A stretch of 64,000 bases of DNA from Stegostoma tigrinum (Eukaryota), in the NCBI RefSeq assembly GCF_030684315.1, contig NC_081374.1:11830837-11894836 (forward strand). The letters are read 5' to 3'. The first letter of the stretch is position 1, and each line of letters opens with the position of its first letter. Positions 1 to 62,226 of this stretch are shown here, piece by piece. The translations under genes and the position numbers were made by a program. The notes beneath the pieces are model-generated. The model did not search any database, was not told where the DNA came from, and was given only the letters and a program-made list of their open reading frames with translations.

Positions 1-52
<52 letters not shown>
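1..52. repeat. (CA)n microsatellite
   Basis: Direct inspection. Confidence 0.98.
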
Positions 53-56
<4 letters not shown>

Positions 57-342
57 GCAGATGACAGAAGGGATAACTCCAGTCTGTTAGGCTGGAGCTG
101 AAAGAGCACTTAATGCTTGAATGAGCACTTAGGGGTCTCAACGGGCAGTGGACAATTGGAGTTGGACGTTGGACTTTCCTGCTGAGATCCAAATCCAAAC
201 AAGGGTGGGGAAGGCGCTGGCTTAGGGGCACCACCATCTTGTCTAATAAAGTTCACTTCCCATCTCCAGCCCTACTGCCTCTGGGCAGAGAAGACTGTAC
301 CTCTCGGTTTCAGAACACTCCTCCTTTGTCAGGTGCCTTCAC

Positions 343-894: not shown

Positions 895-2901
895 AGAGGG
901 GGATGGGGAGAGGGAACTGGAATAAATAGGGAGAGAGGGGGAGGCGGGCCGAAGATGGAGAGAAAAGAAGATGGGTGGAGAGAGCATAGGTGGGGAGGTA
1001 GGGAGGGGATAGGTCAGTCCAGGGAAGACGGACAGGTCAAGGAGGTGGGATGAGGTTAGTAGGTAGATGGGGGTGCGGCTTGGGGTGGGAGGAAGGGATG
1101 GTTGAGAGGAAGAACAGGTTAGGGAGGCAGAGACAGGTTGGACTGGTTTTGGGTGGAGGGGAAGAGCTGGGCTGGTTGTGTGGTGCAGTGGGGGAAGGGG
1201 ACGAACTGGGCTGGTTTAGGGATGCAGTAGGGGAAGGGGAGATTTTGAAACTGGTGAAGTCCACATTGATACGATTAGGCTGCAGGGTTCCCAGGCGGAA
1301 TATGAGTTGCTGTTCCTGCACCCTTCTGGTGGCATCATTGTGGCACTGCAGGAGGCCCATGATGGACATGTCATCTAAAGAATGGGAGGGGGAGTGGAAA
1401 TGGTTTGCGACTGGGAGGTGCAGTAGTTTGTTGCGAACTGAGCGGAGGTGTTCTGCAAAGCGGTCTCCAAGCCTCCGCTTGGTTTCCCCAATGTAGAGGA
1501 AGCCACACCGGGTACAGTGGATGCAGTATACCACATTGGCAGATGTGCAGGTGAACCTCTGCTTAATGTGGAATGTCATCTTGGGGCCTGGGATGGGGGT
1601 GAGGGAGGAGGTGTGGGGGCAAGTGTAGCATTTCCGGTGGTTGCAGGGGAAGGTGCCGGGTGTGGTGGGGTTGGAGGGCAGTGTGGAGCGAACAAGGGAG
1701 TCACGGAGAGAGTGGTCTCTCCGGAAAGCAGACAGGGGTGGGGATGGAAAAATGTCTTGGGTGGTGGAGTCGGATTGTAGATGGCGGAAGTGTCAGAGGA
1801 TGATGCGTTGTATCTGGAGGTTGGTGGGGTGGTGTGTGAGAACGAGGGGGATCCTCTTTGGGCGGTTGTGGCGGGGGCGGGGTGGAGGGATGTGTTGTGG
1901 GAAATGCGGGAGACGCGGTCAAGGGCATTCTAGACCACTGTGGGGGGAAAGTTGCGGTCCTGGAAGAACTTGGACATCTGGGATGTGCGGGAGCAGATGC
2001 GGCGGAGGCAGTGGAATTGGGAATAGGGGATGGAATTTTTGCAGGAGGGTGGGTGGGAGGAGGTGTATTCTAGGTAGCTGTGGGAGTCGGTGGGCTTGAA
2101 ATGGACATCAGTTGCAAGCTGGTTGCCTGAGATGGAGACTGAGAGGTCCAGGAAGGTGAGGAATGTGCTGGAGATGGCCCAAGTGAACTGAAGGTTGGGT
2201 GGAAGGTGTTGGTGAAGTGGATGAACTGTTCGAGCTCCTCCGGGGAGCATGAGGCGGCGCCGATACAGTCATCAATGTACCGGAGGAAGAGGTGGGGTTT
2301 GGGGCCTGTGTAGGTGCGGAAGAGGGACTGTTCCACGTAACCTACAAAGAGGCAGGCATAGCTGGGGCCGATGCGGGTGCCCATGGCAACCATTTCCCCT
2401 CCCCCTCCCATTCTTTAGATGACATGTCCATCATGGGCCTCCTGCAGTGCCACAATGATGCCACCAGAAGGTTGCAGGAACAGCAACTCATATTCCGCCT
2501 GGGAACCCTGCAGCCTAATGATATCAATGTGGACTTCACCAGTTTCAAAATCTCCCCTTCCCCAACTGCATCCCTAAACCAGCCCAGTTCGTCCCCTCCC
2601 CCCACTGCACCACACAACCAGCCCAGCTCTTCCCCTCCACCCAAAACCAGTCCAACCTGTCTCTGCCTCCCTAACCTGTTCTTCCTCTCACCCATCCCTT
2701 CCTCCCACCCCAAGCCGCACCCCCATCTACCTACTAACCTCATCCCACCTCCATGACCTGTCCGTCTTCCCTGGACTGACCTATCCCCTCCCTACCTCCC
2801 CACCTATACTCTCCTCTCCACCAATCTTCTTTTCTCTCCATCTTCGGTCCACCTCCCCCTCTCTCCCTATTTATTCCAGAACCCTCACCCCATCCCCCTC
2901 T

Positions 2902-19722: not shown

Positions 19723-20046
19723 TGCTGCTACTGATTTATATCGTCTAACTGCAGCTTCTCTCTGCTCCCCTGGCAAATGTCACATGAACAATTTCACTGG
19801 ATTTTGTTCCCTGACTATTTAAGGCTGTGCAGTAATATTGATGATGTTGCTGTGTAAAGGATTGACAATGTAGATCCAGTTTGTTGGTGTCAGAGATCTT
19901 TGAATCGTGAGATGGGGCCTTCTCAGACCATGTGTAGTGAATGGGGAGGGATTCCCAGGCAGACTCACAGGAGATTGTCACTGAGCCCCCAGAACATGAG
20001 ATAATTGGTCGTGATTGAAATCAAAGATCAGGAACAGAGACATATT
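19723..20046 (-). pseudogene. Pseudo-exon, C2 Ig domain of a third receptor copy
   Basis: 324 nt, splice sites retained, but CGA>TGA near the start and TAG/TAA near the end. Confidence 0.85.
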
Positions 20047-20224
20047 CTTTGCGAAGAAGCAACTATTACAAAACTGACTGGAAGTGAAAAATTGAAAACC
20101 CAAATAAGATGACCTTCACTTTCACATCCAGCGTCACAAGGTCAGAGAGCACAGAAATAGATCCTTCTGTTTAATACATTCATGCTAAACAAATTCCTCA
20201 AAATAAACTAGCCCCAGCTACCAG

Positions 20225-26059: not shown

Positions 26060-27418
26060 AGACAACAAAGTGTGGAGCTGGATGAACACAGCAGGCCAAG
26101 CAGCATCTCAGGAGCACAAAAGCTGACGTTTCGGGCCTAGATCCTTCATCAGAGAGGGGAATGGGGAGAAGGAACTGGAATAAATAGGGAGAGAGGGGGA
26201 GGCGGACCGAAGATGGAGAGAAAAGAAGATAGGCGGAGAGGAGAGTATAGGTGAGGAGGTAGGGAGGGGATAGGTCAGTCCAGAGAAGACAGACAGGTCA
26301 AGGAGGCAGGATGAGGTGGTAAGTAGGAAATGGAGGTGCGGTTTGAGGTGGGAGGAAGGGATGGGTGAGAGGAAGAACAGGTTAGGGAAGCAGAGACAGG
26401 CTGGGCTGGTTTTGGGATGCAGTGTGGGGAGGGGACAAGCTGGGCTGGTTTTGTGATGCAGTGGGGGGAGGGGATGAACTGGGCTGGTTTTGGGATGCAG
26501 TGGGGGGAGGGGAGATTTTGAAGCTTGTGAAGTCCACAATGATACCATTGGGATGCAGGGTTCCCAAGTGGAATATGAGTTGCTGTTCCTGTAACCTTCG
26601 GGTAGCATCGTTGTGGCACTGCAGGAGGCCCAGGATGGACATGTCGCTTAAGGAATGGGAGGGGGAGTTGAAATGGATCGCGACCAGGAGGTGCAATTGT
26701 TCAGTGCGAACCGAGTGTAGGTTTTCTGCAAAGCGGTCCCCAAACCTCTGCTTGGTCTCCCTGACGTAGAGGAGGCAACAACAGGAATAGTGGATGCAGT
26801 ATAACACATTGGCAGATATACAGGTGAGCATCTGCTTGATATGGAAAGTCGTCTTGTGTCTTGGGATGTGGGTGAGTGGGGAGGTGTGGGGCAGGTGCAA
26901 CACTTCCTCCAGTTGCAGAAAAAAGTGCCGGGTGTGGTGGGGCTGGAGGCCAGTCTGGAGCGGACAAGGGAGTCCTGGGGAGAGTGGTCCCTCTGGAAAG
27001 CAGATAAGGGTGGGGAGGGAAAAATGTCTTTGGTGGTGGGTTCAGATTGCAGATGGCGGAAGGGTCGGAGGATGATATGTTGGATCCGGAGGTTTGTGGG
27101 GTGGTGCATGAGGATGAGGGGGATTCCGTTTTTGTTATTATTGCGGGGACTGTATGTGAGGGATGAGTTGCGGGAAATGCGGGAGACACGGTCGAGGGCA
27201 TTCTCGACCACTGCGGGTGGGGGATATAGCGGTCCTTGAAAAATGAGGACATCTGAGATGTTCGGGAGTGGAATGTCTCATCCTGGGAGCAGATGCGGTG
27301 GAGGCGAAGGAATTGGGAATAGGGGGTGGCATTTTTGCAGGAAGGTGGGTGAGAGGAGGTGCATTCTAGGTAGCTGTGGGAGTCAGTTGTCTTGAAATGG
27401 ATATCGGTTTCTAGGTGA
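26060..27418 (-). mobile_element. 5'-truncated Neptune-type Penelope element
   Basis: PYSQFLRLHRICS, Cys linker CNWRKCCTC, GIY-YIG remnant; hammerhead core at 26125-26152. Confidence 0.9.
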
Positions 27419-30674: not shown

Positions 30675-30971
30675 CTAGAGCTTAACTTCTGCATAAATTG
30701 GCATTTCAGATTCTGGCAAATTCTCTCCTTTTGGAGTTACGACCTTGTTCTCTGGGAGCTGGCTTTGAACCTTGGCATTGCCCCTGGTAACAGAGTAACT
30801 TGTCTCACCACTCCGTGCTGACGACTTCTTTTGAAACTGCGGTTCTGCATACATGACTCCATTTGCATTATTCTTAAAATGGGCAGTTCCTTCACTATGT
30901 ATTCCTCTTGACCTAGTTTCACTGTGCATTATAGTTGCATATACAATGTTCTCTTCAGCTCCTACCATTTG
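30675..30971 (-). CDS. Gene B last exon, tail with IVYATI, VMYAEP, PIYAEV
   Basis: Paralog of gene A tail (shared FQKKSS); phase-0 acceptor. Confidence 0.88.
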   Translation of the reverse strand, partial: QMVGAEENIVYATIMHSETRSRGIHSEGTAHFKNNANGVMYAEPQFQKKSSARSGETSYSVTRGNAKVQSQLPENKVVTPKGENLPESEMPIYAEVKL

Positions 30972-33900: not shown

Positions 33901-36900
33901 GGGAAGTCAGGGAATTTAGGCAGTCATAGAAAAGAGACCACTTGCTGAAAGATTTCCCCTTAAATAAACAAAAATAATAGATAAAGAATCAACTTGGTTT
34001 TAGCAGACATCTACCTTGCAGAAAACTAGACCTCATTAGATTTTAGAAAACGAAGAACTGTGAATGCTGGAGATCTGGAAAAAAAAAGATGTTACTGGAG
34101 AAACTCAGCAGGCCCGAGACACTGAGTTCAAAATGTAAACTCTGCTTTCTTCCCACGGATGTTTTAACCTGACAAGATCCTAAAGAGAATCTAGAACCAA
34201 ATTCGGCAGTCAGTCAGGATTTCAATATTGATCAACTGACTCTGAAGCTAAATCCCTAAAAGTGGAAGTACTGCTCCTGAATTTGACTGCAACTGATTAC
34301 CATTGGATCAACTGGAAGAAATTCAACTTACTAAGTCCTCAGTACTTGCAATTGCAATGTTCATTTGTTAAAAAATATGAAAAATAAAGATCTATCTAAA
34401 TGTCAGTATGACCTCAACCCTTCCCCCATTCACTTCTGACATTCTAAACCAACGTTGATTGCTACTTCCACCAGAATCCACCTGTAGTCAGCTCAAAGCA
34501 TTCTCCCCACTGCGCTCCAAAACCAGTCCAGCTCATCCCCGCCTCCCTAACCTGTTCTTCCTCTCACCCATCCCCTCCTCCCACCTCAAGCCACACCTCC
34601 ATTTCCTACCTACTAACCCCATCCCACCCCCTTCATCTGTCTGTCCTCCCCAGACTGACCTATCCCCTCCCTATCTCCCCATCTACACTCACCTTTACAG
34701 GCTCCATCCCCACCTCTTTAACTTGTCTGTCTCCTCTCCGCCTATCTTCTCCTCTATCCATCTTCAATCCGCCTCCCCCTCTCTCCCTATTCTTTTCAGA
34801 ACCCTCACCCTGTCCCCCTTTTCTGATGAAGTGTCTAGGTCCGAAACATCAGTTTTTGTGCTCCTAAGGTGCTGCTTGACCTGCTGTGTTCATCCAGCTC
34901 CATACTTTGTTATCTCGGATTCTCCAGCATCTGCAGTTCCCATTATCTCTGATACATTAGTATTATGTTTAATCCATGTGGATCAGAATATTCAACAAGT
35001 TATGATGGTTTGTTAACTAACATTTGGTAATTACAATGAACTGCAATCTCTTTTTAATCTGCAGCAAGCTATTGACAGACTATGAAATGATTGAGGAGAA
35101 ATTGAAACTCACCCTTGTTGACTTGCTTCAGGTACAAAAGCAGCAAAACAGCAAAAACAATGAGCATGGTCCCCAGTACAGCGACCACAATGTAAACTGG
35201 ACTGCGATATAGAGAATAGCAAAGGGTCAGTTCACTGTTCACTGTTGGCTCTTGGGCACTTGTTTAAAGGAAGGAAGTTTTAACATTTATATAGCGCCTC
35301 CCATGATCTTTGAGTGGCTCTAAGCACTTTACAGTCAAGAAAGTACTGTTGAATATTTGTCAGTGTCAGAAACAGGAAATTAAGCACCTGATTTCTGTGG
35401 AGAAAAATCTCAGAAGCAGCAATGAGACATGACCAAATAAATATTGGCCACACATCTGGGGGAGACCCTCGTCTGTTTTCTCCAAAAGTAAGGCCTGACT
35501 TGCTGTGTGCGTCCAACACTCTCTATTTCTCTTCTTATTCTAGTTTTGTTTGATATTTTGTTTCTTTTAACTCTGTTACCACCACTGTAAATTCACTGGT
35601 TCAATTCCAATGTTTATGTCAGACTACAATTTCTGAGGCTTATTGCCAGCAGCCTGGGCAATGAGCATGGAGATGGGGAGTGTAGTGTGCAAAATGAGCG
35701 TGTACATTGCAAATAAGATATCTTTCAAGAATTGACTTAACATGACACAATGTCCAGCTGTCATCAGATGAACACCCAGTTGTTCCACCACTGGCTGACT
35801 GAATATAGGACACACCATCTCAGGGGTATAACGTCACAGATAAAGTCATTGAGGTCTAGGGCACAGAAACAGATCCTTCAGTCAACAGATCTGGGCTGAC
35901 CAGACTTTTCAATCTGACCTAATTCCATTTGCCAGCATTTGGCCCATCTCGCTTTAAAATCTTCTTATTCATATATCTGTCCAGATACTTTTTAAATTTT
36001 GGAATTGTACCAGCCTCCATCAGTTCCTTATGCAGTTCATTCCACAAACACACCACCCTCTGCTCAAAAAGGTTGCCTCTTAAGCCCTTCTTAAATTTTC
36101 CCTCTCTCACCTTAAACCTTTGCCCTCTAGCTTTGGATTCACCCACTCAAGGAAATAGATCTCAGCTATTCAACCTGCCCATGCCCCACATAATTTTATA
36201 AACCTCTACAAGGTCACTCCTCAGCCTCTGACGCTGTAGGGAAAATAGCCCCAGCCTATTCAGCCTGTCCCTATAGCTCAAGCCCTCCAGTCCCAGCAAC
36301 ATCCTTGGAAATCTTTTCTGAACCGTCTCGCCTTTAACAACGCCCTGCCTGTAGACATACTATGACAACGTCAATACCTGGAGGATCTATGTAGAAAATC
36401 TTGACACCATTACTTCATAATTACCTAATGTCTTGCACCAGCCAAAACGACATAACAAATAACATTAAATGAACACACCTTCTCTCAACAATACACCATT
36501 CTGCATTGATAATATATTTTGACCTCTTTGGTGGAGGAGGGCACTATTACAACATTGAAAAGGCATTGGATAGGTAAAGAATAGGAAGGGAATATGGGCC
36601 AAATGCAGGCAAATGGAACTAGGTCAGATTGGGATGTTTTGTCCAAATTGGACAGAAATGTCTGTTTCTGTGTTGTGTGACTCTCTGACTCCATCTATGA
36701 TTCTACACTGCACTGTACCCAGTATTTAACATCACATTGGGACCAGCATTAAGAAGAAGGCCTCTTCTCTGCAAACTTAACCAAAGTCGCAAGATGTTCC
36801 TCCCAAGTGATTTTAAACTGAAACGATTTGTTAATGCAATTCTCTATTTTCACTCATAGAGAAACAACTTTTTCAATGGTGCCACGCCAGGACAGAAAAG

Positions 36901-39900
36901 TGCAAGGTAAATGTGACATTCACAAATGTCATGAAATGGGATGAATGTAGTTGTGAAGCAATTGTGATAGATAATGGATTTGAGGGCCAGCAAATTGAGA
37001 GTGTATTAACCCTTGTTCTTATTTCCATCTAACAAAAACAGCATATTTTGTTAAAACAGCTAATGTTACAACCTGATGTCAATCCAGCTCCATTTCCATT
37101 CCAAGAGCTATGTCATGATATAGTGAATGGTTTCTATCCTGAATTGATTCCACTTGATTGGCAATGTGTCCACGAGTATCCGCTCCCTCCACCACTGATG
37201 CTCAGTAGCAGCAGTGTGCACTATCTGCAAGATGCAATGCAGAAATTCCCCAAAGATCCTCAGACAGCACCTTCCAAACCCATATGGGAACACCACCACC
37301 TTCAAGTTCCCCTCCAAGCCACTCACCATCCTGACTTGGAAGTACATCACCGTTTCCCCACTCTCATTGGGTCCAAGTCCTGGAATTCTGTCCACAATGG
37401 AATTGTGCGTGAACTCACAGCAGGTGGGCTCCTTCAGCTCAAGAAAGCAGCTCACCACCACCTTCTCAATGGCAACTAAGGACGGGCAATAAATCTGGCC
37501 AGCCAGCAACACCCGCATCCCACAAAATGAATGAAAAAAAGTCAAAACATTGTTCAAGAGGATTTAATCCCTTGCATGGAAGCTGCCTAACACTAATGAT
37601 GAGATAATTGCACCTTATACCAAGTTGAGACTCATCTTTTGAACTTGAAGTTGTCACCGGTACTGTTGAAATTCCACAACAGTAATCAGCTCCTGTTGAA
37701 ACAAATAAATAACTTTCAGATTAACCTCATTTTGACTGTAGCTAACCATAAGAGGACCACTGTCAAATAGAACCTTTGGGGGAAAATATCTGGCTGAACA
37801 AATGGGTTTAGAAGGCATAATCTGTGTGAAATCCCCATGCCCCCACTAGCAGGGCAATCCCACTCCGAATTGTCAGTGACTAATCTTTCATGGTAGTTTC
37901 TAATTGTATTCCATATCTCACAGATGGTAGCACAGCATTACCAATTGATCTTGTTAATCGACTCCAATCCTTACATTCCTTTTGTGTCCTGTGCAAACAT
38001 ATAATTCTAGCCAGAGAACTGGCCCTACTCATCACTTGGGCAGGCAACGACCACGTGGCATTATCACTAGACTATTATTCTAGAGACCCAGCAACTGGGG
38101 GCCTGGGTTTGAAACCTGAAATGCAGATGGTGGAATTTGAATTCAATAAAAAATAAGAAACTGGAATTTAGCAGGTGAAAGGCAAGGAGGATAAGAATGA
38201 CAGCATTCCAATTAATCAAATCTAATGTTTTTAGATCATTTGTTTTGGTCTCAAAGTTCCAATTCTTTTAACAAAGTGTTAACTTGCCCTCCCATTGGAA
38301 ACCCCTTCATTGCAATCAGCCATCAGGATAATGGAACTGTGATAATGGGAACTGCAGATGCTGTAGAATCCAAGATAATAAAGTGTGAAGCTGGATGAAC
38401 ACAGCAGGCCAAGCAGCATCTCAGGAGCACAAAAGCTGACGTTTCGGGCCTAGACCCCGCCTCCCCCTCTCTCCCTATTTATTCCAGAACCCTCACCCCA
38501 TCCCCCTCTCTGATGAAGGGTCTAGGCCCGAAACGTCAGCTTTTGTGCTCCTGAGATGCTGCTTGGCCTGCTGTGTCCATCCAGCTTCACACTTTATTAT
38601 CTTGGATTCTCCAGCATCTATAGTTCCCATTATCACTGATACAATTTTAACCCCACTGCGAAGCCTCTTCGAGGGATAACCTGAAGAAGTTACCCTCCTT
38701 CCTCCGGACCAACCTCAGGGAATCTCTTCTTTTCTCTCCATCTTCGGTCCGCCTCCCCCTCTCTCCCTATTTATTCCAGAACCCTCACTCCATCCCCCTC
38801 TCTGATGAAGTGTCTAGGCCCGAAACGTCAGCTTTTGTGCTCCTGAGATGTTGCTTGGCCTGCTGTGTTCATCCAGCTTCACACTTTGTTATCTAGGATA
38901 ATGGAACTGTCATGTTCTCTCATGGATAAAACATCAATAAAACATCTTAAAAGAGAATAATTAATGATACCACTGAGGCATGTACCGTGAGATACTTGTA
39001 GCTCAATTTCAGTAGACACTGAAATGTGGCCAGATTGTTCAATACCACAGCTGTACCATCCTGCATCTTCTGAGTGAAGATCCTCCATTGTAACAGAAAA
39101 CATATTTTGTGTCTTGTTATCGATGATAGATATCCTTCCTCGCTGTCCATGATGGTCATTTGATTTTACTAAAACAGAGCACTGGCGACTCCAAAATTTC
39201 ACATATAATTGTGACCATTTGTCATAGTGACAATCGATTGTGATAGCTCTTCCCAAAACGCCTGTTACTTTATTTTTTGCTGGCACTACAGTTGAACCTG
39301 AAAAGACAATTAATTAATCAAACAGAAATGAACTTCTCAATATGATCAGATACATTTAATGTGAGTTGCCACTGAACACAGAGGAATCTGTCCATTGCAT
39401 CATACGGCTTGTGATGAAATCAACTTCTTGTCCATCTCATTTGAACAAGGAGACCAGCATTCCCTGAGACATGTAACGTTCAGTGTATACTCAGTTGAAG
39501 AGTAGCTTTGTGGTGACATTCCATTTGGGCCAACCACAGGATTTGTGTAAAATAGGCCCAAAGTGGGGCTTTTTGTAGGATTTTCACTTAGTACAGTTTT
39601 AGGGTCACTGAAGAGCATTTTCAAAGAATACAAATTGGGTACTGAAGATCACTGAATTTTGAAGGAGACAGAGACTAGACTCCTTCAAAGTACTGATGTT
39701 TAGTAATGCAGTAGTAAAGACAAAGTAACAGAGCTGCTTGTGTACTGCAGAGGGAGCTTTGAGTGAAGTTCGAGGGCAGTTAGATATGTTGGTGCAGCGT
39801 TGGATGTAGCCATCAGTGATCTGGAATCATTGTGAAGGACCCAAAGGGAGAGATCCTCATGGATAGCACATCCAGTGATGTCATCACTCAGCAGGTAAAG

Positions 39901-42900
39901 AGTGCACTCATGGAGAGGGAATGAGAGACTGAGAGAGAAAACTCTAGGCAGGGAGGACTGAAATATAGAAAGTTGTCTCCCTTTCTAATAGATTTTCTCT
40001 TTTTGGATACTGCTGTGGGGAGATGTGTTCTCAGGGGAATGCAGAGACAGCCAAATCCATGGCACCAGGAGTGGCTCAGCACCTGACTGTGGGGAGAGAG
40101 GGATTTAGACTCTGGAGGCATTGGGTACAATTCTATGAAGATGGAATCTGTACAAGCTGGACGGGTCACAAACCAGCAGACCCAGGACCAATGGCCTCTG
40201 ACAGGCTTTTGCAAGTTCCTTGATGAGAGGTTAAAGTGGCAGGGCACCATGACCATGAATCATAATCTCATGTCACCTATGGGCACATCAGATTTTACTT
40301 ACTATGTGTGTTTTTTGAAAGGGAATTGATCAAGCCAAAATTATCACAGATGTGAATTCAGTGGACATTTGGAGAGAGAGATTAGAATGTTGTACCTAGT
40401 GTTTGTTAAGGAAACTTCAACAGGTTGACCTAAAGGGAGAAATAAGCAATAAAGTGAAATGTGTTTGCCTTAGAAGTTATCTCAGACTATGATCATGACT
40501 CACAGAAATGATTTTTTTAAGGCTACCACTTTTGTTTATACATATAGATAGGAGTCAAAAGAGAACTTCACTCCCAATGTCTCTCCCTTCCATTATTAAT
40601 ATTTCTTGTGTTCAGTAAGTAACAAACTCACCTCTTGTTAGCTCAAGAAAGCTCCTTTAAATGGACTCCTTTGACAACATAAACACATTTGATCTGGCAA
40701 AAAGGGATCCACAAGGGAAAGGAGAAGTAGTAGTAAATTAATGCAGATATGAATGAAAAAAAAGCTGAGGTTCTTGAAGCTCCAAGTAATGCTTACCATG
40801 GCTCCCAATTTGTGCCAAATAACTGCAGTTGCTCTCTGATCTATGGATGACTGACACATTAACCATTTCACTGTATTTTTCTCCCTGAGTATTAGATGCT
40901 GTGCAGTAATATTGATGATGTTGCAGTTTGAATAATTGACAATGTAGATCCACTTTATTGTTCTCAGAAATCATTGAATCTTCAGAAGTGGTCTTTTCAT
41001 ACCATGTGTATCGAATGGGAAGGGATCCCTGGGCAGACTCACAGGAGATACAAACTGAGTGTTCAAAACATGAGATATTTGATGGTGATAAAAACCGAAT
41101 GACAGGAAGAGAAACGGGATCTGTGGGGAAAGAAGCAAATTATCAGACACTGACTGAGAATTCAAAAGCTAAATATTCTGCAAATTTTAGCATTTCTATC
41201 TTTCATCCAAGTCTTTTCATGTTGGAATCTCTACAGTTGCATTCCAGTTTCAGCTAAGTGTTGCATTAATTGAGTGATTAAGACACTTCCCCTCCCATGG
41301 GACTCCCTCACACACAGATTGTGATGTTGCAAAATACTTTCAGAATCTGTTTGAGGTGATCTCTTGAAATGCCAGACCATATAGGAAGATGGGTAAGGTG
41401 CTGGAACATGGGGCCATCATATTTAGATGCTTGTTGACCAGCATGGACATGATGGGACAAATGTCCTCTTCGCATGCGTAACACTATATTGCTCTAAAAT
41501 AGATGTTGGCAAGACTGGCTGGCTTCCAGAAATTCTGAGAACTGCTGTGTTGATCCCAAAACTTGTGACATTCTGCAGGCTACTGTGACCATATTGGTTT
41601 TGAAGATCAGCATGTTGAAGATCTGACTAGAGGATTTTGGATATACTGTAATGTAATGTAAAAGAGCTATTTAATGACCTTGTTGTAAAGAACTTTTAGG
41701 GATGAATGATCAGAATATGACTGAATTATACATTATGTCTGGGAATAAGGTATTTCCATCTGAAGCAAGATGGAATTGGGAAAATTATGAAGGAGAGAGG
41801 CACAAATTGGTTGAGCTGGATTGGGAAAATACATTGAAGGGCAGGTCAGTATATTACTCATGGAGAGTCTTTAAAGTCTATTTCATGGCTTGCAGCAACA
41901 ACATATTTTACTCAAAAACGATATAAATTAACCACAGCTGATAAAAGGATGTGAAGCACTTCCGGGATCAGAACACAAGGCTCATAAAGTGGCCAAAATT
42001 GATAGAAATCTGAGGACTGTTTTTTTTTAGTCATACAAGAAAGCAGGACCTTAAAACTGAAGAGACCAGAATAGAATACAAATGCAACCTAACAAAAAAA
42101 ATAAAATTTTAAGCTTCTTTAGGAATATATAAATAAATAACTTGACAATGACAAACATGGATCTGTGAAAAGCAGCATTGGGGGAATGTATATGAGGAAA
42201 TGGAGAAATAGCAATGGAGCTAAATGAGTAATTTGTGATGATTTTTGCTGAGGAAAATGCAAGAAAATAACTTAAAATAGAGATCCAAGTGTGAAGGGAG
42301 AATGAGGAATTGAAGCAAGTTAGCACTGAGAACATTGTGCTGGAGAAATTAATGGAAGGTGATAAATCCCCAAGACCTGACAGGCTGCACTCTAAAATGT
42401 CAACAAACTTGTCAATAGAGATAGATGGTGCATCAGTAATTATCGTCCAAATCTCCAGATAATCTGGAATTATTTCTGCAGAGGAGAAGCTTGCAAATGT
42501 CACCCCACTACTTATGGAAGGGGAAAGGAGGAAAATAGGGAACTATTGATCCATCAACCTTACTTCAGCAGGAAGGGAAATAGTAGACTTTATCATAAAA
42601 CATGTGACAAACAGTAATTTGAATAAAAAACAGTTTGATGGTGTACAGTCAGCATGGATTTGTGAATGGACAATTGTGTTTTACCAACTTGTTGGAGCTT
42701 CATCAGGTTATTACCATAAACTTGACAAAGGGAAGTTAATGGATGGAGTGCATTTGGATTTTGAGAAGGCTTTTAAAGATGATCCCAAAGGAGTTTGGTT
42801 TGCAAAGTTGAAGGACATGGTATCAGAAGTAATACAATGAAATGGATTGATGATTGGTGAGTAGTCAGAAAATAGAAATTATGAATAAATTGAGCATTCT

Positions 42901-45900
42901 CATACTCGCAGGTTGTGACTGATGGGGTACTATAAGGATCTGTATTTGAGTCCCAGCTTTTTTCAATATATATCAATGATTTTGACATGGAGACTAAATT
43001 TAACATTTCCTAACTTTCAGACAATGCAAACAAATGAGAATTATGTGTTATGAGGAAGGTGCTGAACATCTCCAGGAGAATTTCGACAGGTTTAATGATT
43101 GGGCAAGAGTTCGGTCAATGGAATATAATGTGGATAAATGTGAGGCTACCACTTTGTGGGAAGAACAAATGAGCAGAATAGTTTGTAAATGTTGAGATGT
43201 TGGAAAATGTAGATGTGCAAAAAGTTTTGGGTGTCCTTGTCAGTAAGATACTGAGGCAATCATGCAGGTGCATTAAGATGTTAGGAAGGCTAATGGAATA
43301 TTAACCTTTATTACAAGAGAATTTCAGTGCAGGAATTGAGAAACCTTGCTTTGCTTGTTGTGTTGGATCATGGATATACTGCACCTGGAGTATTTTCTGC
43401 AGTTTCAATAAACTTATCTCAGGAAAGTTATTATTACCATAGAAGAGTACATCAATGATTTACCAGACATTTTTTGGAAATTTAACGTGGAAGTTGATAA
43501 ATTTTTGATTATTAATTGTGTGAAGAGTTGAGAGGATAATTTGGTTTAACCAAATTGCAGTGTTTGATCAGCCATGATTCTATTAAATAATGAGGCATGT
43601 TCAATAAGTCGAATGGCCTCCTCCTGGTCCTATGTTTTTACAAATAAGCATTGCTGTAGCACCTTGGGATATTGGAGAATTCATGGTTTCTCTCAGGCAA
43701 AGCACCAATTGGTCACTTCATTAGAGATTAATAAAGGCAATCGATCAAAACTATACCGTAAAATACTTCGAGCTTCACAGCAGTTAATTCATCTCTAAGC
43801 CATCTACCAATACCACAGCTGTACCATCCTGCATCTTCCATGCGAAGACCCTCCATGGTAACAACAAATACTCCTTGTGTCTTGTTATCTTTGATTGACA
43901 TTCTTCCTTGCTGTCCACCAGGATCAGTCGTTCTCACCAAATATGAGCAGTGCATGGTCCTGCCTTGACACCAGTATTTCATGTTGTCCTTGAGCCTTGT
44001 GTTGTAGTTACAATCTATTGTGATTGATCTTCCCACAATTCCTGTTACTTTCTCCTTTGACCACACAGCTGGTAATGAAACGGGGGAGGTGATGTTTCAG
44101 AAATTGAATTAGAATTAGGTTCTTATTACAAATAAATACATCCTAATAAGTTTTACCCCTCTACACAGAGAAACTCTGCGCTGTATCTGTTACAAACTTA
44201 TGACCATATAAATTAGGAATTACAATCTGGAACAGTAAAGCAGCAGTGGGACATCCAGCCCTTGAAGCTATTTGCCATGCAGAAGTTCATGGTCGATCTG
44301 TTTGTGTTCCGAAATTCACATTCCCCATTTATACTGATAACCTTTGATTTTTGTCTCACAAATATCTACCACCCTGCACCACCATCCATGGCAGACTGTT
44401 CCCATTTCTTCCCATCTCTGTCTTTAAAAGATGACGCCTAGTTGTAAAATAGTGTCCCCTGAGGGACTTACCAGGAAATGGTTTTGAGATCTAACCTCCC
44501 CAATGTCCTGCAACGCTGAAGCACAATGTCCTCACTGTTATATTCAGTTCCTCTTATAATATAGGATAGCATTGTAATAGCTTTCTTCATCACATGTTGA
44601 TACTTGCATTCTAACTTCATGTGACTCATGCACTAGAACACCTCGATCCCTCTGCACCTCAGATTTCTGCATGTGTATAAACTTAAATAATACTCAGCTG
44701 CTCCAGGAGTTTGACTTGGTGACAGGAAAGGAACAATGATGTAGTTCCATGCCAGGACGCTATGTGATATGAACATCAGTTTTGGAGGTCAGAAATCAAA
44801 ACAGTCCCATGAAATTGACATCAGTTTTGGATTATTAATTTCAAAATAGTTATATATTCCTTTTGGATACTTCTGTGAAAGTTTGTCTTTAAAATAAAAT
44901 GAAAGTAGGAATCCCTGTGAAACTCTGACCTTACACTGGCCTTAGTTAGATAGCAAGTGCATTCAAACCCTAAGTTGTATGTCATTAGAAAAGTGTTTAT
45001 CCTGTGCTGCTTCATGACAGGTTTATAAACATTGACGATAATTAGCTGGCGACTAAAACAAAGCTGCTGGAAAAGCCCTGCAGGTCTGGCAGAATCTATG
45101 AAAGAAAGAAACAGAGTTAAAGTTTCAGGGTCCAGAAGGTTAACTCAGCTTTTTTTCTTTCATAGATGCTGCCAGGCCTGCTGAGCTTTTCCAGCAACTT
45201 TGTTTTTGTTCCTGATTTACAGCATCCACAGTTCCTTTGATAATTCACTTGCTTTCAGTTCAGATTAACGTTGATTTTAGTTTGCAAAACTCAGACTGAA
45301 AAGTCTTTGCTCAGTTCTGTGATGTCATTGCTGGGTTTAGATGCAAGTATATTTTCTCTCCTGGAACGTTATTTTTCAGAGCAGTCGCTAAACAATTTAC
45401 CTCAGCAGAATGGTAGATTGTAAACATTCCAAATTGCGAGAGACAGGCTAGAAAATTAGAAAAAAATTTAAGCTGTCAGCTTTGTGAATATTCATGTAAA
45501 ACTGTCAAACTGTTCACAGGAAAGAAAGAAGGAGTAATCATTGAAGAAAGATGAAAGAACATCAATATTTTATGCAAAGGGATAATTTCTCTGAATTTGA
45601 ATAATTGTAAATTGATATTGTTGGGAAACAGTTGGAAACTTTGTTTTGTTGTGTGTTTTAAAATTCTTCTAAACTGTTTACCTGTATAGATTGCCGTGTC
45701 TTTTAATTTCGTTCATGCAGTGTTTAGTCGTTGAAAGGTAGTCGCAGAAGGTTCAAAAAAACGAAATTAAAAAACACGGCAATCTATACAGGTAAACAGT
45801 TTAGAAGAATTTTAAAACACACAACAAAACAAAGTTTCCAACTGTTTCCCAACAATATCAATTTACAATTATTCAAATTCAGAGAAATTATCCCTTTGCA

Positions 45901-50244: not shown

Positions 50245-51337
50245 TAAACAAAGAAACAAAGAAGCCTACAGCACAGGAACAGGCCCTTCGGCCCTCCAAG
50301 CCTGCGCCGATCAAGATCCTCTGTCTAACCAGTCATCTATTTTCTAACGGTCTGTGTCCATTTGCTCCCTGCCCATCCATGTACCTGTCCAAATATATCT
50401 TAAAAGACGCTAACGTGTCTGCGTCTACCACCTCCGCTGACAACGCATTCCAGGCACCTACGACCCTCTGTGTAAAGAACTTTCCAGTATATCTCCCTTA
50501 AACTTTCCTCCTCTCACTTTGAACTCATGACCCCTAGTAATTGAGTCCCCCACTCTGGGAAAAAGCTTTTTGCTATCCACCCTGTCTATACCCCTCATGA
50601 TTTTGTACACCTCAGTCAGGTCCCCCCTCAATCTCCGTCTTGCTAATGAAAATAATCCTAATCTACTCAACCTTTCTTCATAGCTAGCACCCTCCGTACC
50701 AGGCAACATCCTGGTGAATGTCCTCTGCATCCTCTCCAAAGCATCCACATCCTTTTGGTAATGTGGTGACCAGAACTGTACACAGTACTCTAAATGTAGC
50801 CGAACCAAAGTCCTATACAACTGCAACATGACCTGCCAACTCTTGTACTCAATACCCCGCCCAATGAGGGAAAGCGTGCCATATGCCTTCTTGACCACCC
50901 TATTGACCTGTGTTGTCACCTTCAGGGAACAATGGACCTGAACACCCAGATCTCTCTGTTCATCAATTTTCCATGGGACTTTTCCATTTACTGTATAGTT
51001 CGCCCTTGAATTTGATCTTCCAAAATGTATCACCTTGAATTTTCCCGGATTGAACTCCATCTGCCGTTTATCTGCCCAACTCTCCAGTCTGTCTATATTC
51101 TGCTGTAATCTCTGACAGTCTCCTTCACTATCAGCTACTCCACCAATCTTAGTGTCATTAGTAAACTTGCTACCTACACCTTCCTCCAGATCATTTACAT
51201 ATATCACAAACAACAGTGGTCCCAGCACAGATCCCTGTGGAACATCACTGATCACAGCTCTCCAATTAGAGAAACTCCCTTCTACTACTACCCTCTATCT
51301 CCTGTTGCCTAGCCAGTTTTTTTTCCATCTAGCTAGT
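50245..51337 (-). mobile_element. Young 5'-truncated CR1
   Basis: 265-aa RT C-terminal ORF (VPQGSVLGPLLF..). Confidence 0.92.
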
Positions 51338-52090: not shown

Positions 52091-52130
52091 CTGGAATGGA
52101 ACAAATAAGAACAATCAAAGTCCACATCAT
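52091..52130 (-). other. Orphan or alternative leader exon (M)MWTLIVLICSIP
   Basis: Close paralog of gene A exon 1 with intact gtgagt donor; no V exon seen between it and the 48.7-kb leader. Confidence 0.75.
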
Positions 52131-58490: not shown

Positions 58491-61400
58491 ACATAACTTG
58501 TATTTCTGGTTGCAGCAGCAGCGCGAGCAGGAGCTTGGAGCAGGGTCCTGTCGGGAAGCCGGTGAGTCACTGTTTTTGAATCTATAAAAAGCTTACCTCG
58601 TGAATAGGCGGAGGTACGCTGAGCAGGAGCCGGCACAGGACTGGTGAGTGAGTGAGGTAATGTATTTGAGTGGTTACCAGGGGAAAGCAGTGGGGCACAG
58701 GTCTCTGGCACAGAGTCTGTCCCTGCTGGTCAGAAGGGAAGGGGGAAGAGGAACAGAGCACTAGTCATTGGGGACTCATAGTTAAGGGGACAGATAGGAG
58801 GTTCTGTGGGGGCGAGAGAGACTCACGGTTGGTGCGTTGCCTCCCAGGTGCCAGGGCTTGTGATGTCTCTGATCGTGTTTTTGGGATCCTTAAGGGGGAG
58901 GGGGAGCAGCCTCAACTCGCGGTCCACATTGGCACCAACGACATAGGTAGGAAGAGAGACGGGGATTTAAGGCAGAAATTCAGGGAGCTAGGATGGAAGC
59001 TGAGAGCTAGGACGAACAGAGTTGCTGTCTCTGGTTTGTTGCCCGTGCCACGTGCTAGTGAGGCGAGGAATAGGGAGTGAGAGGAGTTGAACACGTGGCT
59101 ATAGGGATGGTGCAGGAGGGAGGGTTTTGGATTCTTGGACAATTGGGGCTCTTTCTGGGGTAGGTGGGACCTCTACAAGCAAGATGGTCTTCACCTGAGC
59201 CAGAGGGGTACCAATATCCTGGGGGGGAAATTTGCTAAGGCTGTCCGGGTGGGTTTAAACTAATTCAGCAAGGGGATGGGCACCAAAATTGTAGTTCGAC
59301 TATAGGAAAGGTTGAGAGTAGGGTGGTCTGAAATAAAGTTTCAGGGAAGCAAGATGGCACCGGCAAGCAAGAAGTTGGATTGAAGTGTGTCTACTTCAAT
59401 GCCCAGAGCGTCCGGAATAAGGTGGGTGAACTTGCAGCATGGGTTAGTACCTGGGACTTCGATGTTATGGCCATTTCGGAGACATGGATAGAGCAGGGAC
59501 AGGAATGGTTGTTGCAGGTTCCGGGATTTAGATGTTTCAGTAAGAACAGAGAAGATGGTAAAAGTGCGGAGGTGTGGCATTGTTGGTCAAGGACAGTATT
59601 ACAGTTGCAGAAAGGATGTTTGGGGACTCGTCAACTGAGGTAGTATGGGCTGAGGTTAGAAACAGGAAAGGAGAGGTCACCCTGTTGGGAGTTTTCTATA
59701 GGCCTCGAATAGTTCCAGAGATGTAGAGGAAAGGATAGCAAAGATGATTCTCGATAGGAGTGAGAGAGACAGGGTAGTTGTCATGGGGGACTTCAACTTT
59801 CTAGATATTGACTGGGAACACTATAGTTCGAGTACTATAGATAGGTCAGTTTTTGTCCAGAGTGAGCAGGAGGGCTTCCTGACACAGTATGTAGATAGGC
59901 CAACAAGGGGCGAAGCCACATTAGATTTGGTACTGGGTAACGAGCCCGGCCAGGTGTTAGATTTGGAAGTAGGTGAGCACTTTGGTGATAGCGATCACAA
60001 TTCTGTTATGTTTACTTTAATGATGGAAAGGGATAGGTGTATACCACTGGGCAAGAGTTATAGCTGGGGGAAAGGCAATTACGATGAGATTAGGGAAGAT
60101 TTGGGAGCATAGAATGGGGAAGGAAACTGCAGGGGATGGGCACATTAGAAATGTGGAGCTTATTCAAGGAAAAGCTCCTGTGTGTCCGAGATAAATATGT
60201 ACCTGTCAGGTAGGGAGGAACCTGTAGAGTGCGGGAGCCGTGGTTTACAAAAGAGGTGGAATCTCTGGTCAAGAGGAAAAAGGAGGTTTATGTTAGGATG
60301 AGATGTGAAGGCTCAGTTAGGGCTCTTGAGGGCTACGAGGTAGCCCAGAAAGACCGAAAGAGAGAGCTCAGAAGAGCCAGGAGGAGACATGAGAAGTTGT
60401 TGGCAGATAGGATCAGGGTAAACCCTAAGGATTTCTATAGGTATTTAAGGAATAAAAGAATGACGGAAGTAAGATTAGGGCCAATCAAGGATAGTAGTGG
60501 GAAGTTGTGTGTGGAGTCAGGTGAGATAGGGGAAGCGCTAAATGAATATTTTTCAACAGTATTCACTCTAGAAAACGACAATGTTGTCAAGGAGAATGCT
60601 GAGATACAGGCTACTAGACTAGGTGAGATTGAGGTTCACACGGAAGAGGTATTAGAAATCCTTCAGAAGTTGAAGATAGATAAGTCCCCTGGGCCGGATG
60701 GGATTTATCCTAGGATCCTCTGGGAAGCCAGGGAGGAGATTGCCGAGCCTTTGGCATTGATCTTTAACTCATCATTGTATACAGGAATAGTGCCAGATGA
60801 TTGGAGGATAGCAAATGTGGTTCCCCTGTTCAAGAAGGGGAGTAGAGACAACCCTGGTAATTATAGACCAGTGAGCCTTACCTCAGTTGTTGGTAAAGTG
60901 TTGGAAAAGTTTATAAGGGATAGGATTTATAATCATTTAGAAAAGAATAAATTGATTAGGGATAGTCAGCACGGTTTTGTGAAGGGAAGGTCGTGCCTCA
61001 CAAACTTCATTGAGTTCTTTGAGAAGATGACCAAACAGGTAGATGAGAGTAAACCGGTTGATGTGGTGTATATGGATTTCAGCAAGGCGTTCGATAAGGT
61101 TCCCCACAATAGGCTATTGTACAAAATGCGGAGGAATGGGATTGTGGGAGATATAGCAGTTTGGATCGGAAATTGGCTTGCTGAAAGAAGACAGAGGGTG
61201 GTAGTTGATGGGAAATGTTCATCCTGGAGACCAGTTACTAGTAGTGTACTGCAAGGGTCGGTGTTGGGTCCACTGTTGTTTGTCATTTTTATAAATGACC
61301 TGGATGAGGGCATAGAAGGATGGGTTAGTAAATTTGCAGACGACACTAAGGTCGGTAGAGTTGTGGATAGTGATGAAGGATGCTATAGGTTGCAGAGAGA

Positions 61401-62226
61401 CATAGATAAGCTGCAGAGCTGGGCTGAGAGGTGGAAAATGGAGTTTAATGCAGACAAGTGTGAAGTGATGCACTTTGGTAGGAGTAACCGGAAGGCAAAG
61501 TACAGGGCTAATGGTAAGATTCTTAGTAGTGTAGATGAGCAGAGAGATCTCGGTGTCCATGTACACAGATCCTTGAAAGTTGCCACCCAGGTTGACAGGG
61601 CTGTTAAGAAGGCATACAGTGTTTTAGCTTTTATTAATAGAGGGATCAAGTCCTGGAACGAAGAGGTTATGGTGAAGCTCTACAAAACTCTGGTGCAGCC
61701 GCACTTGGAGTATTGTGTACAGTTCTGGTCACCGCATTATAAGGAGGATGTGGAAGCTTTGGAAAGGGTGCAGAGGAGATTTACTAGGATGTTGCCTGGT
61801 ATGGAGGGAAGGTCTTATGAGGAAAGGCTGAGTGACTTGAGGCTGTTTTCATTAGAGAGAAGAAGGTTGAGAGGTGACTTAATTGAAACATATAAAATAA
61901 TCAGAGGGTTAGATATGGTGGATAGGGAGAGCCTTTTTCCTAGGATGGTGATGGCGAGCATGAGGGGGCATAGCTTTAAATTGAGGGGTGAAAGATATAG
62001 GACAGATGTCAGAGGTAGTTTCTTTACTCAGAGTAGTAAGGGAATGGAATGCTTTGCCTGCAACGGTAGTAGATTCGCCAACTTTAGGTACATTTAAGTC
62101 ATCATTGGACAAGCATATGGACGTACATGGAATAGTGTAGGTTAGATGGGCTTGAGATTGGTATGACAGGTCGGCACAACATCAAGGGCTGAAGGGCCTG
62201 TACTGTGCTGTAATGCTCTATGTTCT
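58491..62226 (+). mobile_element. Near full-length CR1 LINE: 5'UTR, partial ORF1 with SGNH esterase, disrupted APE, 622-aa RT ORF; nested in an HE1-like SINE
   Basis: VHIGTND esterase motif; KFADDTK RT; ttctat tail; SINE halves at ~58295-58490 and 62227-62380; possible 5-bp TSD atctt. Confidence 0.93.
60229..62097 (+). CDS. CR1 ORF2 reverse-transcriptase portion (disabled element)
   Basis: NYRPVSLTS, DFSKAFD, QGSVLGP, FADD. Confidence 0.8.
   Translation: MREPWFTKEVESLVKRKKEVYVRMRCEGSVRALEGYEVAQKDRKRELRRARRRHEKLLADRIRVNPKDFYRYLRNKRMTEVRLGPIKDSSGKLCVESGEIGEALNEYFSTVFTLENDNVVKENAEIQATRLGEIEVHTEEVLEILQKLKIDKSPGPDGIYPRILWEAREEIAEPLALIFNSSLYTGIVPDDWRIANVVPLFKKGSRDNPGNYRPVSLTSVVGKVLEKFIRDRIYNHLEKNKLIRDSQHGFVKGRSCLTNFIEFFEKMTKQVDESKPVDVVYMDFSKAFDKVPHNRLLYKMRRNGIVGDIAVWIGNWLAERRQRVVVDGKCSSWRPVTSSVLQGSVLGPLLFVIFINDLDEGIEGWVSKFADDTKVGRVVDSDEGCYRLQRDIDKLQSWAERWKMEFNADKCEVMHFGRSNRKAKYRANGKILSSVDEQRDLGVHVHRSLKVATQVDRAVKKAYSVLAFINRGIKSWNEEVMVKLYKTLVQPHLEYCVQFWSPHYKEDVEALERVQRRFTRMLPGMEGRSYEERLSDLRLFSLERRRLRGDLIETYKIIRGLDMVDRESLFPRMVMASMRGHSFKLRGERYRTDVRGSFFTQSSKGMECFACNGSRFANFRYI

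What the first reader, a model, noticed from the sequence alone, without database searches (positions are those of the whole stretch)
43791..43802. WLRD motif in the FG loop of gene B V1: predicted metal-dependent phosphatidylserine/PE pocket
Seen: YSCGIGR-WLRD-ELTAVKLEV. Recalled knowledge: human CD300a has WLRD in its FG loop, needed for PS/PE binding, and TIM proteins have WFND at the same distance from the G-strand end. Inference: a shark inhibitory sensor of apoptotic-cell lipids, by ancestry or convergence.
Basis: partly seen in the sequence, partly recalled or inferred. Interest (0 to 1): 0.8.

Follow-up and report, generated by a model that had tools for sequence, protein, structure and literature searches.

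The report
Shark CD300-like V domain, WLRD loop

Summary
Observation confirmed. Window 43791-43802 (minus strand) encodes W89-L90-R91-D92 of an intact phase 1-1 V-set exon (44068-43757).

A confident AF2 model (pLDDT 95) puts GRWLRD in the FG loop. The best structural match is mouse CD300lf (Z 19.6, rmsd 1.2 A over 102 residues), then human CD300f, teleost pIgR and human CD300a. No TIM entry is among the 50 shown.

By alignment register, D92 is CD300lf Asp98, the Ca2+-chelating residue of its phosphocholine pocket. C33-C40 is its Cys36-Cys44 disulfide and Y31 its Tyr34. This Asp is a family feature (39 of 48 aligned relatives).

W, L and R are not conserved:
- Whale shark, the closest relative and collinear: RIKD.
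- Bamboo and epaulette sharks: QVID or QDSD.
- None of 171 retrieved relatives (about 530 V domains) has WLRD.

Differences among these sharks concentrate in the BC, CC' and FG loops.

A cation-assisted head-group pocket of CD300lf type is therefore plausible by ancestry. The identity with the recalled CD300a motif is best read as a recent, lineage-specific loop variant. Lipid binding is untested. CD300a's own motif and its role could not be verified with the tools.

This is a new member of a known kind. Interest is low to moderate.

The parts
43791..43802 (-). Codons W89 L90 R91 D92 (TGG CTT AGA GAT). FG-loop tip. D92 (43791-43793) is the family-conserved Asp.
   Evidence: D92 = CD300lf Asp98 by register.
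43757..44068 (-). V1 exon, 312 nt, phase 1-1. CD300/pIgR-type V-set domain.
   Evidence: Pfam V-set 2e-13. Splice sites read. AF2 pLDDT 95.1. VIA Z 19.6 to mouse CD300lf. A spliced contig of a related organism fits V1 joined to the C2 exon.
43947..43970 (-). C33...C40 (WCQGRTMHC): the CD300/pIgR/TREM-type second disulfide and the CC' loop. Corresponds to CD300lf Cys36-Cys44 and is one residue shorter.
   Evidence: (C33 and C40 at least 90% conserved in A1)
43815..44012 (-). Canonical B-F disulfide pair C19 (44010-44012) and C84 (43815-43817).
   Evidence: Invariant columns C19 and C84 in alignment A1.
40797..41120 (-). C2-type Ig exon following V1. Acceptor ccccacag|AT completes G|AT = Asp.
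   Evidence: (92% to whale shark P0154 aa 121-229). Splice joint to V2 seen in runs X1 and X3.
38986..39297 (-). V2 exon, 312 nt. Second V domain, lacking the first CC' Cys and the FG Asp.
   Evidence: Joint 39295/7 to 40795/7 with GT..AG on the minus strand.
35018..35260 (-). Candidate stalk/TM exon (SPVYIVVAVLGTMLIVFAVLLLLYLKQ), with no charged TM residue.
   Evidence: tblastn with P0143, translation. Its link to V1 is inferred, not shown.
30678..30971 (-). Candidate cytoplasmic exon with Tyr motifs IVYATI (canonical ITIM), VMYAEP and PIYAEV.
   Evidence: Its link to V1 is inferred, not shown.
52091..52130 (-). Candidate leader exon MMWTLIVLICSIP with donor CAG|GTGAGT in phase 1.
   Evidence: Pattern scan. 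Resembles the whale shark leader MWSFILLIYSVP. Not confirmed by RNA.

Best explanation
V1 is the membrane-distal V-set domain of a multi-domain (V-C2-V-...-TM-ITIM tail) CD300/pIgR-like receptor gene of an orectolobiform-like shark. It keeps the architecture of the CD300lf-type ligand cleft: a CC' loop stapled by the second disulfide on one side and, on the other, an FG loop of the same length as CD300lf's that ends in the conserved Asp.

By homology (inferred), that Asp together with FG-loop backbone carbonyls holds a divalent cation that bridges a phosphate or other polar head group lying in the cleft.

The W-L-R residues before the Asp are a lineage-specific state of a fast-evolving loop tip, so their identity with the recalled human CD300a motif is coincidence or at most convergence. 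A Trp-Leu tip flanked by Arg could raise membrane affinity, by analogy with the Trp-Phe of TIM, but this is speculation.
For: Family and fold: Pfam V-set. PDB sequence hits to pIgR, CLM-1/CD300lf, CD300c and CD300a. AF2 pLDDT 95.1 with GRWLRD as the FG loop. Foldseek TM 0.90 and VIA Z 19.6, rmsd 1.2 A over 102 of 103 residues, both to mouse CD300lf.

Register: V1 aa 55-94 align ungapped to 6c74_A 61-100, and model 1..103 matches entry residues 4..109. This makes D92=Asp98, L94=Met100, R88=Lys94, L90=Gly96, Y31=Tyr34 and C33-C40=Cys36-Cys44. The roles of these CD300lf residues are taken from PMC6166816.

Conservation: D in 39 of 48 rows, family consensus CGIxxxGxDxxxxVxLxV.

Non-conservation of W, L and R: whale shark NRRIKD, bamboo and epaulette sharks DRQVID or DKQDSD. 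No WLRD in 171 proteins.

Loop-focused divergence: 11 of the 15 differences between the window and whale shark lie in the BC, CC' or FG/G-start regions.

Gene context and splicing.
Against: No binding data exist. I could not inspect the model's coordinates, so the orientation of W89 and D92 toward the cleft is inferred from the 1.2 A superposition, not measured.

This orectolobiform subgroup lacks the family's conserved Gly at Cys+6 (CD300lf Gly96, a carbonyl ligand of the metal), having L, I, V or D instead. It lacks Trp at Cys-1 (CD300lf Trp89). It has no Arg in register with CD300lf Arg42. The pocket may therefore be remodelled or not bind a cation at all.

Hypervariable cleft loops fit a changing protein or pathogen ligand better than an invariant lipid head group.

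The link from V1 to the ITIM tail is not shown by RNA of this species.
Confidence: 0.6

Rival explanations
1. One reading: WLRD is a functional four-residue PS/PE-binding motif shared with human CD300a (by descent or selected convergence), making gene B an inhibitory sensor of apoptotic-cell aminophospholipids.
For: The motif is on the FG loop. The Asp is in register with the Ca2+ ligand of CD300lf. In TIM proteins the Trp-Phe of WFND stabilises the lipid tails, and less hydrophobic tips lower PS affinity (PMC4624681). WxxD at exactly these columns recurs in CD300/pIgR-like V domains of catfish, Prochilodus, bowfin, bichir and a newt, the last with WFND. There is an ITIM-bearing tail candidate.
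Against: W, L and R are absent from all closest relatives, and WLRD from 171 relatives, so descent of the tetrapeptide is excluded. Selection for it is undemonstrated. The CD300a claim could not be verified here. The best structural relative is CD300lf, whose printed ligand is phosphocholine, so PS/PE specificity is not implied.
Confidence: 0.15
2. V1 recognises a protein or glycan ligand (immunoglobulin as in pIgR, or a host or pathogen surface molecule). Its BC, CC' and FG loops act like CDRs under diversifying selection, and the Asp is structural or incidental.
For: The highest summed sequence scores are to pIgR domains. NCBI names the relatives 'polymeric immunoglobulin receptor-like' or 'Fc receptor-like 5'. 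Differences among close relatives are concentrated in the three distal loops, while the C'-E framework is almost invariant. V1 is 83% identical to whale shark against 92% for C2 and V2. The CD300lf cleft itself is used by a viral protein ligand (PMC6166816).
Against: Single-domain sequence and structure matches favour CD300lf over pIgR D1. The Asp and the disulfide-stapled CC' loop are kept, as in the lipid binders. No ligand candidate is known.
Confidence: 0.2
3. The exon is a decaying or unexpressed copy in a large tandem family, so the loop sequence has no function.
For: No RNA run of this organism was found. The gene is interrupted by long introns carrying retroelement ORFs. No protein of the window's own species appeared in the protein searches.
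Against: The reading frame is open, all four structural Cys are kept, and splice sites are good for V1, C2 and V2. The collinear gene of a related organism is transcribed and spliced V1-C2-V2. AF2 confidence is very high.
Confidence: 0.05

Closest known systems
Mouse CD300lf / CLM-1 IgV domain (PDB 5ffl, 1zox, 6c6q, 6c74)
   Same: Best structural match: Z 19.6, rmsd 1.2 A over 102 of 103 residues, 40% identity. The FG-loop length is the same. The Asp is in register with Asp98. The second disulfide is in register with Cys36-Cys44, Tyr with Tyr34, and a hydrophobic residue with Met100.
   Different: Gly96 is replaced by Leu, Trp89 by Ser, and the CC' loop is one residue shorter with no Arg in register with Arg42. 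The gene architecture is V-C2-V rather than a single V on a stalk.
Human CD300a / IRp60 (PDB 2q87) and CD300c (9z0m)
   Same: Same V-domain subfamily: E 6e-15, TM 0.85, Z 16.8. Inhibitory ITIM receptor logic.
   Different: It ranks below CD300lf, human CD300f and teleost pIgR. HMMER pairs 39 V1 residues with 40 CD300a residues across this region, so one extra residue lies somewhere between aa 55 and 93. The motif and its role in CD300a were not verifiable with the tools. The shark's nearest relatives lack W, L and R, so there is no descent of the tetrapeptide.
TIM-1/-3/-4 IgV domains with the WFND metal-dependent PS site
   Same: The pocket lies between the CC' and FG loops. A hydrophobic tip is followed by an Asp (PMC4624681). 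CD300lf's ligand orientation and metal use are described as very similar to TIM-4's (PMC6166816).
   Different: TIM-1 is only a weak sequence hit (E 2.7e-4) and no TIM entry is in the top 50 structural matches. V1 has 4 Cys, not 6, Arg-Asp instead of Asn-Asp, and a C2 domain rather than a mucin domain after it.
Shark 'polymeric immunoglobulin receptor-like' / 'Fc receptor-like 5' gene models (Rhincodon typus P0154; Hemiscyllium P0009, P0157, P0159; Chiloscyllium P0151, P0152), and the skate MDIR family
   Same: P0154 is collinear with gene B: V1 83%, C2 92%, V2 92%. The V-C2-V architecture is the same, as are the DEL-x-AVK-x-EV G strand and the Asp. MDIRs are described as CD300/TREM/pIgR-like modular receptors of skate (PMC3031540).
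   Different: Their FG tips are RRIK, RQVI or KQDS instead of RWLR. MDIR sequences were not retrieved, so that relation is by description only.

Membership tests
CD300/pIgR/TREM-type V-set domain | V-set Ig fold with the canonical B-F disulfide | tested here: met
   Pfam PF07686 E 2e-13. AF2 pLDDT 95.1. C19 and C84 invariant. Z 19.6 to CD300lf.
CD300/pIgR/TREM-type V-set domain | Second disulfide joining strands C and C' (CD300lf Cys36-Cys44) | tested here: met
   C33 and C40 are present and at least 90% conserved in A1. The bond itself is inferred.
CD300lf-type cation-dependent head-group pocket | FG-loop Asp whose side chain chelates Ca2+/Mg2+ (Asp98) | tested here: met
   D92 aligns with residue 98 (ungapped HMMER range; VIA ranges; role from PMC6166816). 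Conserved in 39 of 48 relatives.
CD300lf-type cation-dependent head-group pocket | Pocket-lining residues Tyr34, Trp89, Gln41, Arg42, Met100, and Gly96 in the metal loop | tested here: inconclusive
   Y31 and L94 fit. S83 replaces Trp89 and L90 replaces Gly96. Nothing matches Gln41/Arg42 in register, because the CC' loop is one residue shorter. The CD300lf sequence itself was never printed, so this mapping rests on residue numbers.
CD300lf-type cation-dependent head-group pocket | Cation-dependent binding of phospholipid head groups | not testable with these tools
   Needs recombinant V1 and liposome, ELISA or SPR assays with and without EDTA.
Mammalian CD300 gene family (orthology) | Single V domain on a stalk, in the CD300 gene cluster | tested here: not met
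   Gene B is V-C2-V-.... Synteny was not tested.
TIM family (MILIBS / WFND) | Six-cysteine IgV, and an FG motif with an Asn-Asp pair after two hydrophobic residues | tested here: not met
   Four Cys in V1. The motif is W-L-R-D with Arg, not Asn. TIM-1 E 2.7e-4 only and absent from the top 50 structural matches. Motif definition from PMC4624681.
pIgR proper | Ectodomain made only of tandem V-type domains (5 in mammals, 2 in teleosts) that bind polymeric Ig | tested here: not met
   C2-type exons alternate with the V exons. Ig binding is not testable here.
ITIM-bearing inhibitory receptor | Uncharged TM and cytoplasmic (S/I/V/L)xYxx(I/V/L) | tested here: inconclusive
   The TM candidate has no charged residue and the tail exon has IVYATI. 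That V1 is spliced to them in this species is not shown.

The most novel reading that the evidence does not exclude
The Trp-Leu tip arose recently in this shark lineage. R to W, I to L and K to R each need at least one base change from the whale-shark state. It would be an adaptive gain that turns an ancestral, low-affinity CD300lf-type cation pocket into a membrane-inserting PS/PE sensor. That would be convergent with the WFND of TIM proteins, the WLRD recalled for CD300a, and the WxxD loops of several bony-fish and newt CD300/pIgR-like domains. Possibly it is coupled to the loss of the family's CC'-loop Trp (W36 in whale shark, R36 here).
Probability: 0.1. Interest if true: 0.55.

Novelty: new member of a known kind. 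Interest (0 to 1): 0.25.

Why it matters
If V1 binds phospholipid through the conserved Asp, the CD300lf/TIM-style cation-assisted lipid pocket would date to before the split of cartilaginous and bony vertebrates. The natural loop variants (WLRD, RIKD, QVID, QDSD) would form a ready-made series for asking how loop-tip hydrophobicity tunes membrane recognition. As it stands, the finding mainly shows that a four-letter match to a mammalian motif can arise inside a hypervariable loop. The informative feature is the family-wide Asp and disulfide, not WLRD.

Tried and rejected
1. AF2 on the single sequence gave pLDDT 35.7 and was discarded. The alignment-based model replaced it.

2. The word-index search with the V1 exon alone was blank, because relatives are much longer multi-domain proteins. 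The full HMMER library search and two region-restricted searches with P0009 and P0154 were used instead.

3. I tried three times to see the residue-level PDB alignment to CD300a, CD300c and CD300lf. Multi-domain pIgR chains fill the five printed alignments, and a 24-aa query found nothing useful. Registers were therefore inferred from alignment ranges.

4. Literature check of 'WLRD in CD300a': no held paper has the motif together with CD300. Simhadri 2012, Choi 2011, Carnec 2016 and Borrego 2013 are not held. The reviews I read give no residue detail.

5. No RNA run of the window's own organism was found. The only spliced contigs come from a related organism, and they stop aligning at 43808, so they say nothing about that organism's FG-loop letters.

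8. TIM membership and pIgR membership were considered and rejected (see the membership test).

Full report
**Observation.** The minus strand of window 43791-43802 reads TGG CTT AGA GAT, which is W-L-R-D. These are residues 89-92 of the open frame 43728-44066.
- The exon runs from 44068 (acceptor ttaccag|CT) to 43757 (donor TAC G|gtatag). It is 312 nt and phase 1-1, like the two other V exons of the window.
- The window has no N.
- Genomic contigs of the same organism (run X5, piece 43119-43838) match with 0 differences. They may come from the sample that was assembled, so they are not independent support.

**What the domain is.**
- Pfam calls it V-set (E 2e-13).
- Against PDB sequences it hits pIgR domains, mouse CLM-1/CD300lf (6.5e-18), CD300c, CD300a (6e-15), NKp44, TLT-1 and TREM2. 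TIM-1 is only a weak hit (2.7e-4).
- A single-sequence AF2 run failed (pLDDT 35.7). With a 48-row alignment of relatives (A1) the model reached pLDDT 95.1. It shows strand C at 30-34, C' at 41-45, F at 80-86 and G at 93-102, so GRWLRD (87-92) is the FG loop.
- Foldseek ranks mouse CD300lf first (TM 0.90, 40% identity) and human CD300a eighth (TM 0.85).
- VIA-align gives CD300lf Z 19.6 at rmsd 1.2 A over 102 of 103 residues. Then come human CD300f 18.6, teleost pIgR 17.3, CD300a 16.8 and TREM2 about 15. No TIM entry is among the 50 shown.

**Register with the solved lipid pocket.** PMC6166816 describes mouse CD300lf with phosphocholine.
- The head group lies in a cleft between the CDR3 (FG) and CC' loops.
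- A Ca2+ is held by the carbonyls of Lys94 and Gly96 and by the side chain of Asp98.
- The floor of the cleft is the Cys36-Cys44 disulfide with Met100, Tyr34, Trp89, Gln41 and Arg42.

HMMER aligns V1 residues 55-94 without gaps to positions 61-100 of chain 6c74_A. The structural alignment pairs model 1..103 with entry residues 4..109. Both give an offset of +6 in the C-terminal half and +3 at the N-terminus. The resulting correspondences are:

| V1 | CD300lf | Note |
|---|---|---|
| D92 | Asp98 | same residue |
| L94 | Met100 | hydrophobic in both |
| R88 | Lys94 | basic in both |
| L90 | Gly96 | different |
| S83 | Trp89 | different |
| Y31 | Tyr34 | same residue |
| C33-C40 | Cys36-Cys44 | CC' loop one residue shorter |

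The family consensus CGIxxxGxDxxxxVxLxV, and the most common Met at Cys+10, reproduce the G96/D98/M100 spacing, which cross-checks the register. The CD300lf sequence itself was never printed, so this mapping rests on numbers, not on letters I saw.

**Conservation.** The full HMMER search found 2687 relatives.
- None of the best 150, and none of 21 further named shark proteins, contains WLRD.
- The Asp column holds D in 39 of 48 rows of A1.
- The closest relative is a whale-shark model (P0154, 'polymeric immunoglobulin receptor-like'). It is collinear with the window: V1 83%, C2 92%, V2 92%. Its loop is CGINRRIKDELYAV.
- Chiloscyllium and Hemiscyllium relatives have CGIDRQVIDELRAV or CGIDKQDSDEL/DQL.
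- Sharks of other orders have the canonical xPGxD or SGIDPRF loops.

So D92 and the following E-L...AVK.EV strand are conserved in this subgroup, while W89, L90 and R91 are unique to the window. Given D at Cys+8, the empirical frequencies of W, L and R at the three columns multiply to 3.5e-4. That is rare for one domain. It is not negligible across a genome with many such V domains (earlier notes list at least ten such loci) and several candidate motifs.

**Where the relatives differ.** In an ungapped alignment of the seven subgroup members, variable positions cluster in the BC loop (18-27), the CC' loop (34-39) and the FG loop (87-91, 95). Residues 40-75 are almost invariant. Of the 15 differences between the window and whale shark, 11 lie in these loops. 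V1 is also more diverged than C2 and V2 (83% against 92%). This looks like a fast-evolving ligand surface around a fixed Asp. It fits a tunable or changing ligand better than a strictly conserved PS/PE motif.

**Recurrence elsewhere.** W-x-x-D at exactly Cys+5..+8 occurs in CD300/pIgR-like V domains of several other vertebrates:

| Species | Motif |
|---|---|
| Silurus | WLSD |
| Prochilodus | WGSD |
| Amia | WGKD |
| Erpetoichthys | WGYD |
| Lissotriton (newt) | WFND |

In TIM proteins the Trp-Phe of WFND is thought to stabilise the fatty-acid part of PS, and the less hydrophobic tips of TIM-3 lower PS affinity (PMC4624681). A Trp-Leu tip could therefore matter for membrane binding, but nothing here shows it.

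**Gene context.** All features are on the minus strand.

| Feature | Coordinates | Evidence |
|---|---|---|
| Candidate leader | 52130-52091 | |
| V1 | 44068-43757 | |
| C2 | 41120-40797 | |
| V2 | 39297-38986 | |
| Candidate uncharged TM exon | about 35260-35018 | |
| Tail exon with IVYATI, VMYAEP, PIYAEV | 30971-30678 | |

- No RNA run of this organism was found.
- Contigs of a related organism (about 89% identical) are spliced. A joint 39295/7 to 40795/7 with GT..AG on the minus strand joins C2 to V2.
- One contig carries 40949-41112, then 59 unaligned letters, then 43808-43951. That equals 8 nt up to the C2 acceptor at 41120 plus the last 51 nt of V1, so it fits V1 spliced to C2.
- Both contigs of that organism that reach this end of V1 stop aligning at 43808, so its FG-loop letters were not seen.

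**Verdict on the interpretation.**
- The motif is on the FG/CC' cleft, so the first refutation criterion is not met.
- The tetrapeptide is not conserved in other chondrichthyans, so the second criterion is met for W, L and R but not for D.
- Ca2+-dependent lipid binding is untested.
- That human CD300a carries WLRD and needs it is recalled knowledge, which I share from memory. I could not verify it: no held paper has the motif together with CD300, the key papers are not held, and the PDB alignment to 2q87 was never printed. HMMER pairs 39 V1 residues with 40 CD300a residues over this stretch, so at least one indel separates them somewhere between aa 55 and 93.

I conclude that the Asp and the disulfide-stapled cleft are ancestral CD300lf-type features, and that W-L-R is a recent lineage-specific state.

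- Read laying was given exactly 6000 letters.
- Nothing in this work called for a referred step.

Noticed in passing
window 43959-43961 (R36) and 43800-43802 (W89), compared with P0154 residues W53 and R106: The window and whale-shark V1 look like a Trp/Arg swap across the cleft. The family's common CC'-loop Trp (HGWT) is Arg here, while the FG-loop Arg of whale shark is Trp here. Of the seven subgroup members, three have W36, one has W89 and three have neither, so there is no strict coupling.
   Followed up: partly
window 38986-39297 (-): V2 lacks the first Cys of the CC' pair (KFW----SRQC) and has no Asp at Cys+8 (CGIEQSGHISVSTEIELQV). Whale-shark, Hemiscyllium and Chiloscyllium relatives share both features, so V2 is a conserved non-pocket V domain.
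   Followed up: partly
window 38894-38985 (-) and P0154 aa 338-363: The whale-shark gene model P0154 reads through the V2 donor into sequence homologous to the window's intron (GTFLSGIVDYSLLRCFIDV...). It then continues to a third V domain and a TM without ITIM that have no close counterpart in gene B. This is either intron retention or a mis-joined annotation.
   Followed up: no
   Followed up: partly
window 38800-38900: This stretch is an extremely high-copy repeat. Summed contig depth there runs to millions, with thousands of loose ends and back-joints in all four runs.
   Followed up: no
window 19757-20062 (-): An orphan C2-type Ig exon, 79% identical in protein to gene A's C2 exon (11734-12072), lies about 7 kb upstream of gene A's V exon. 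No V exon next to it was detected.
   Followed up: no
window 12259-12555 (-): Gene A's V domain has the FG loop CGIEAPGLDPMF. Its G, D and M fall exactly on CD300lf Gly96, Asp98 and Met100 by the same register. This is a more canonical CD300lf-like pocket than V1's.
   Followed up: partly
P0085 residues about 686-714 (Lissotriton helveticus): A newt CD300/pIgR-like V domain carries the exact TIM motif WFND in its FG loop (CGTEIWFNDNMYQV), at the same columns as the shark WLRD.
   Followed up: no
window 60229-62097 (+), 50458-51255 (-), 1037-1579 (-), 26382-26903 (-): There are long retroelement-like ORFs: a 622-aa reverse-transcriptase-like frame, shorter RT pieces inside gene B's first intron, and repeated frames with a CIHC...GFLYIGET... 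motif followed by Pro/Ser-rich tails. These were judged by eye from the ORF list only.
   Followed up: no
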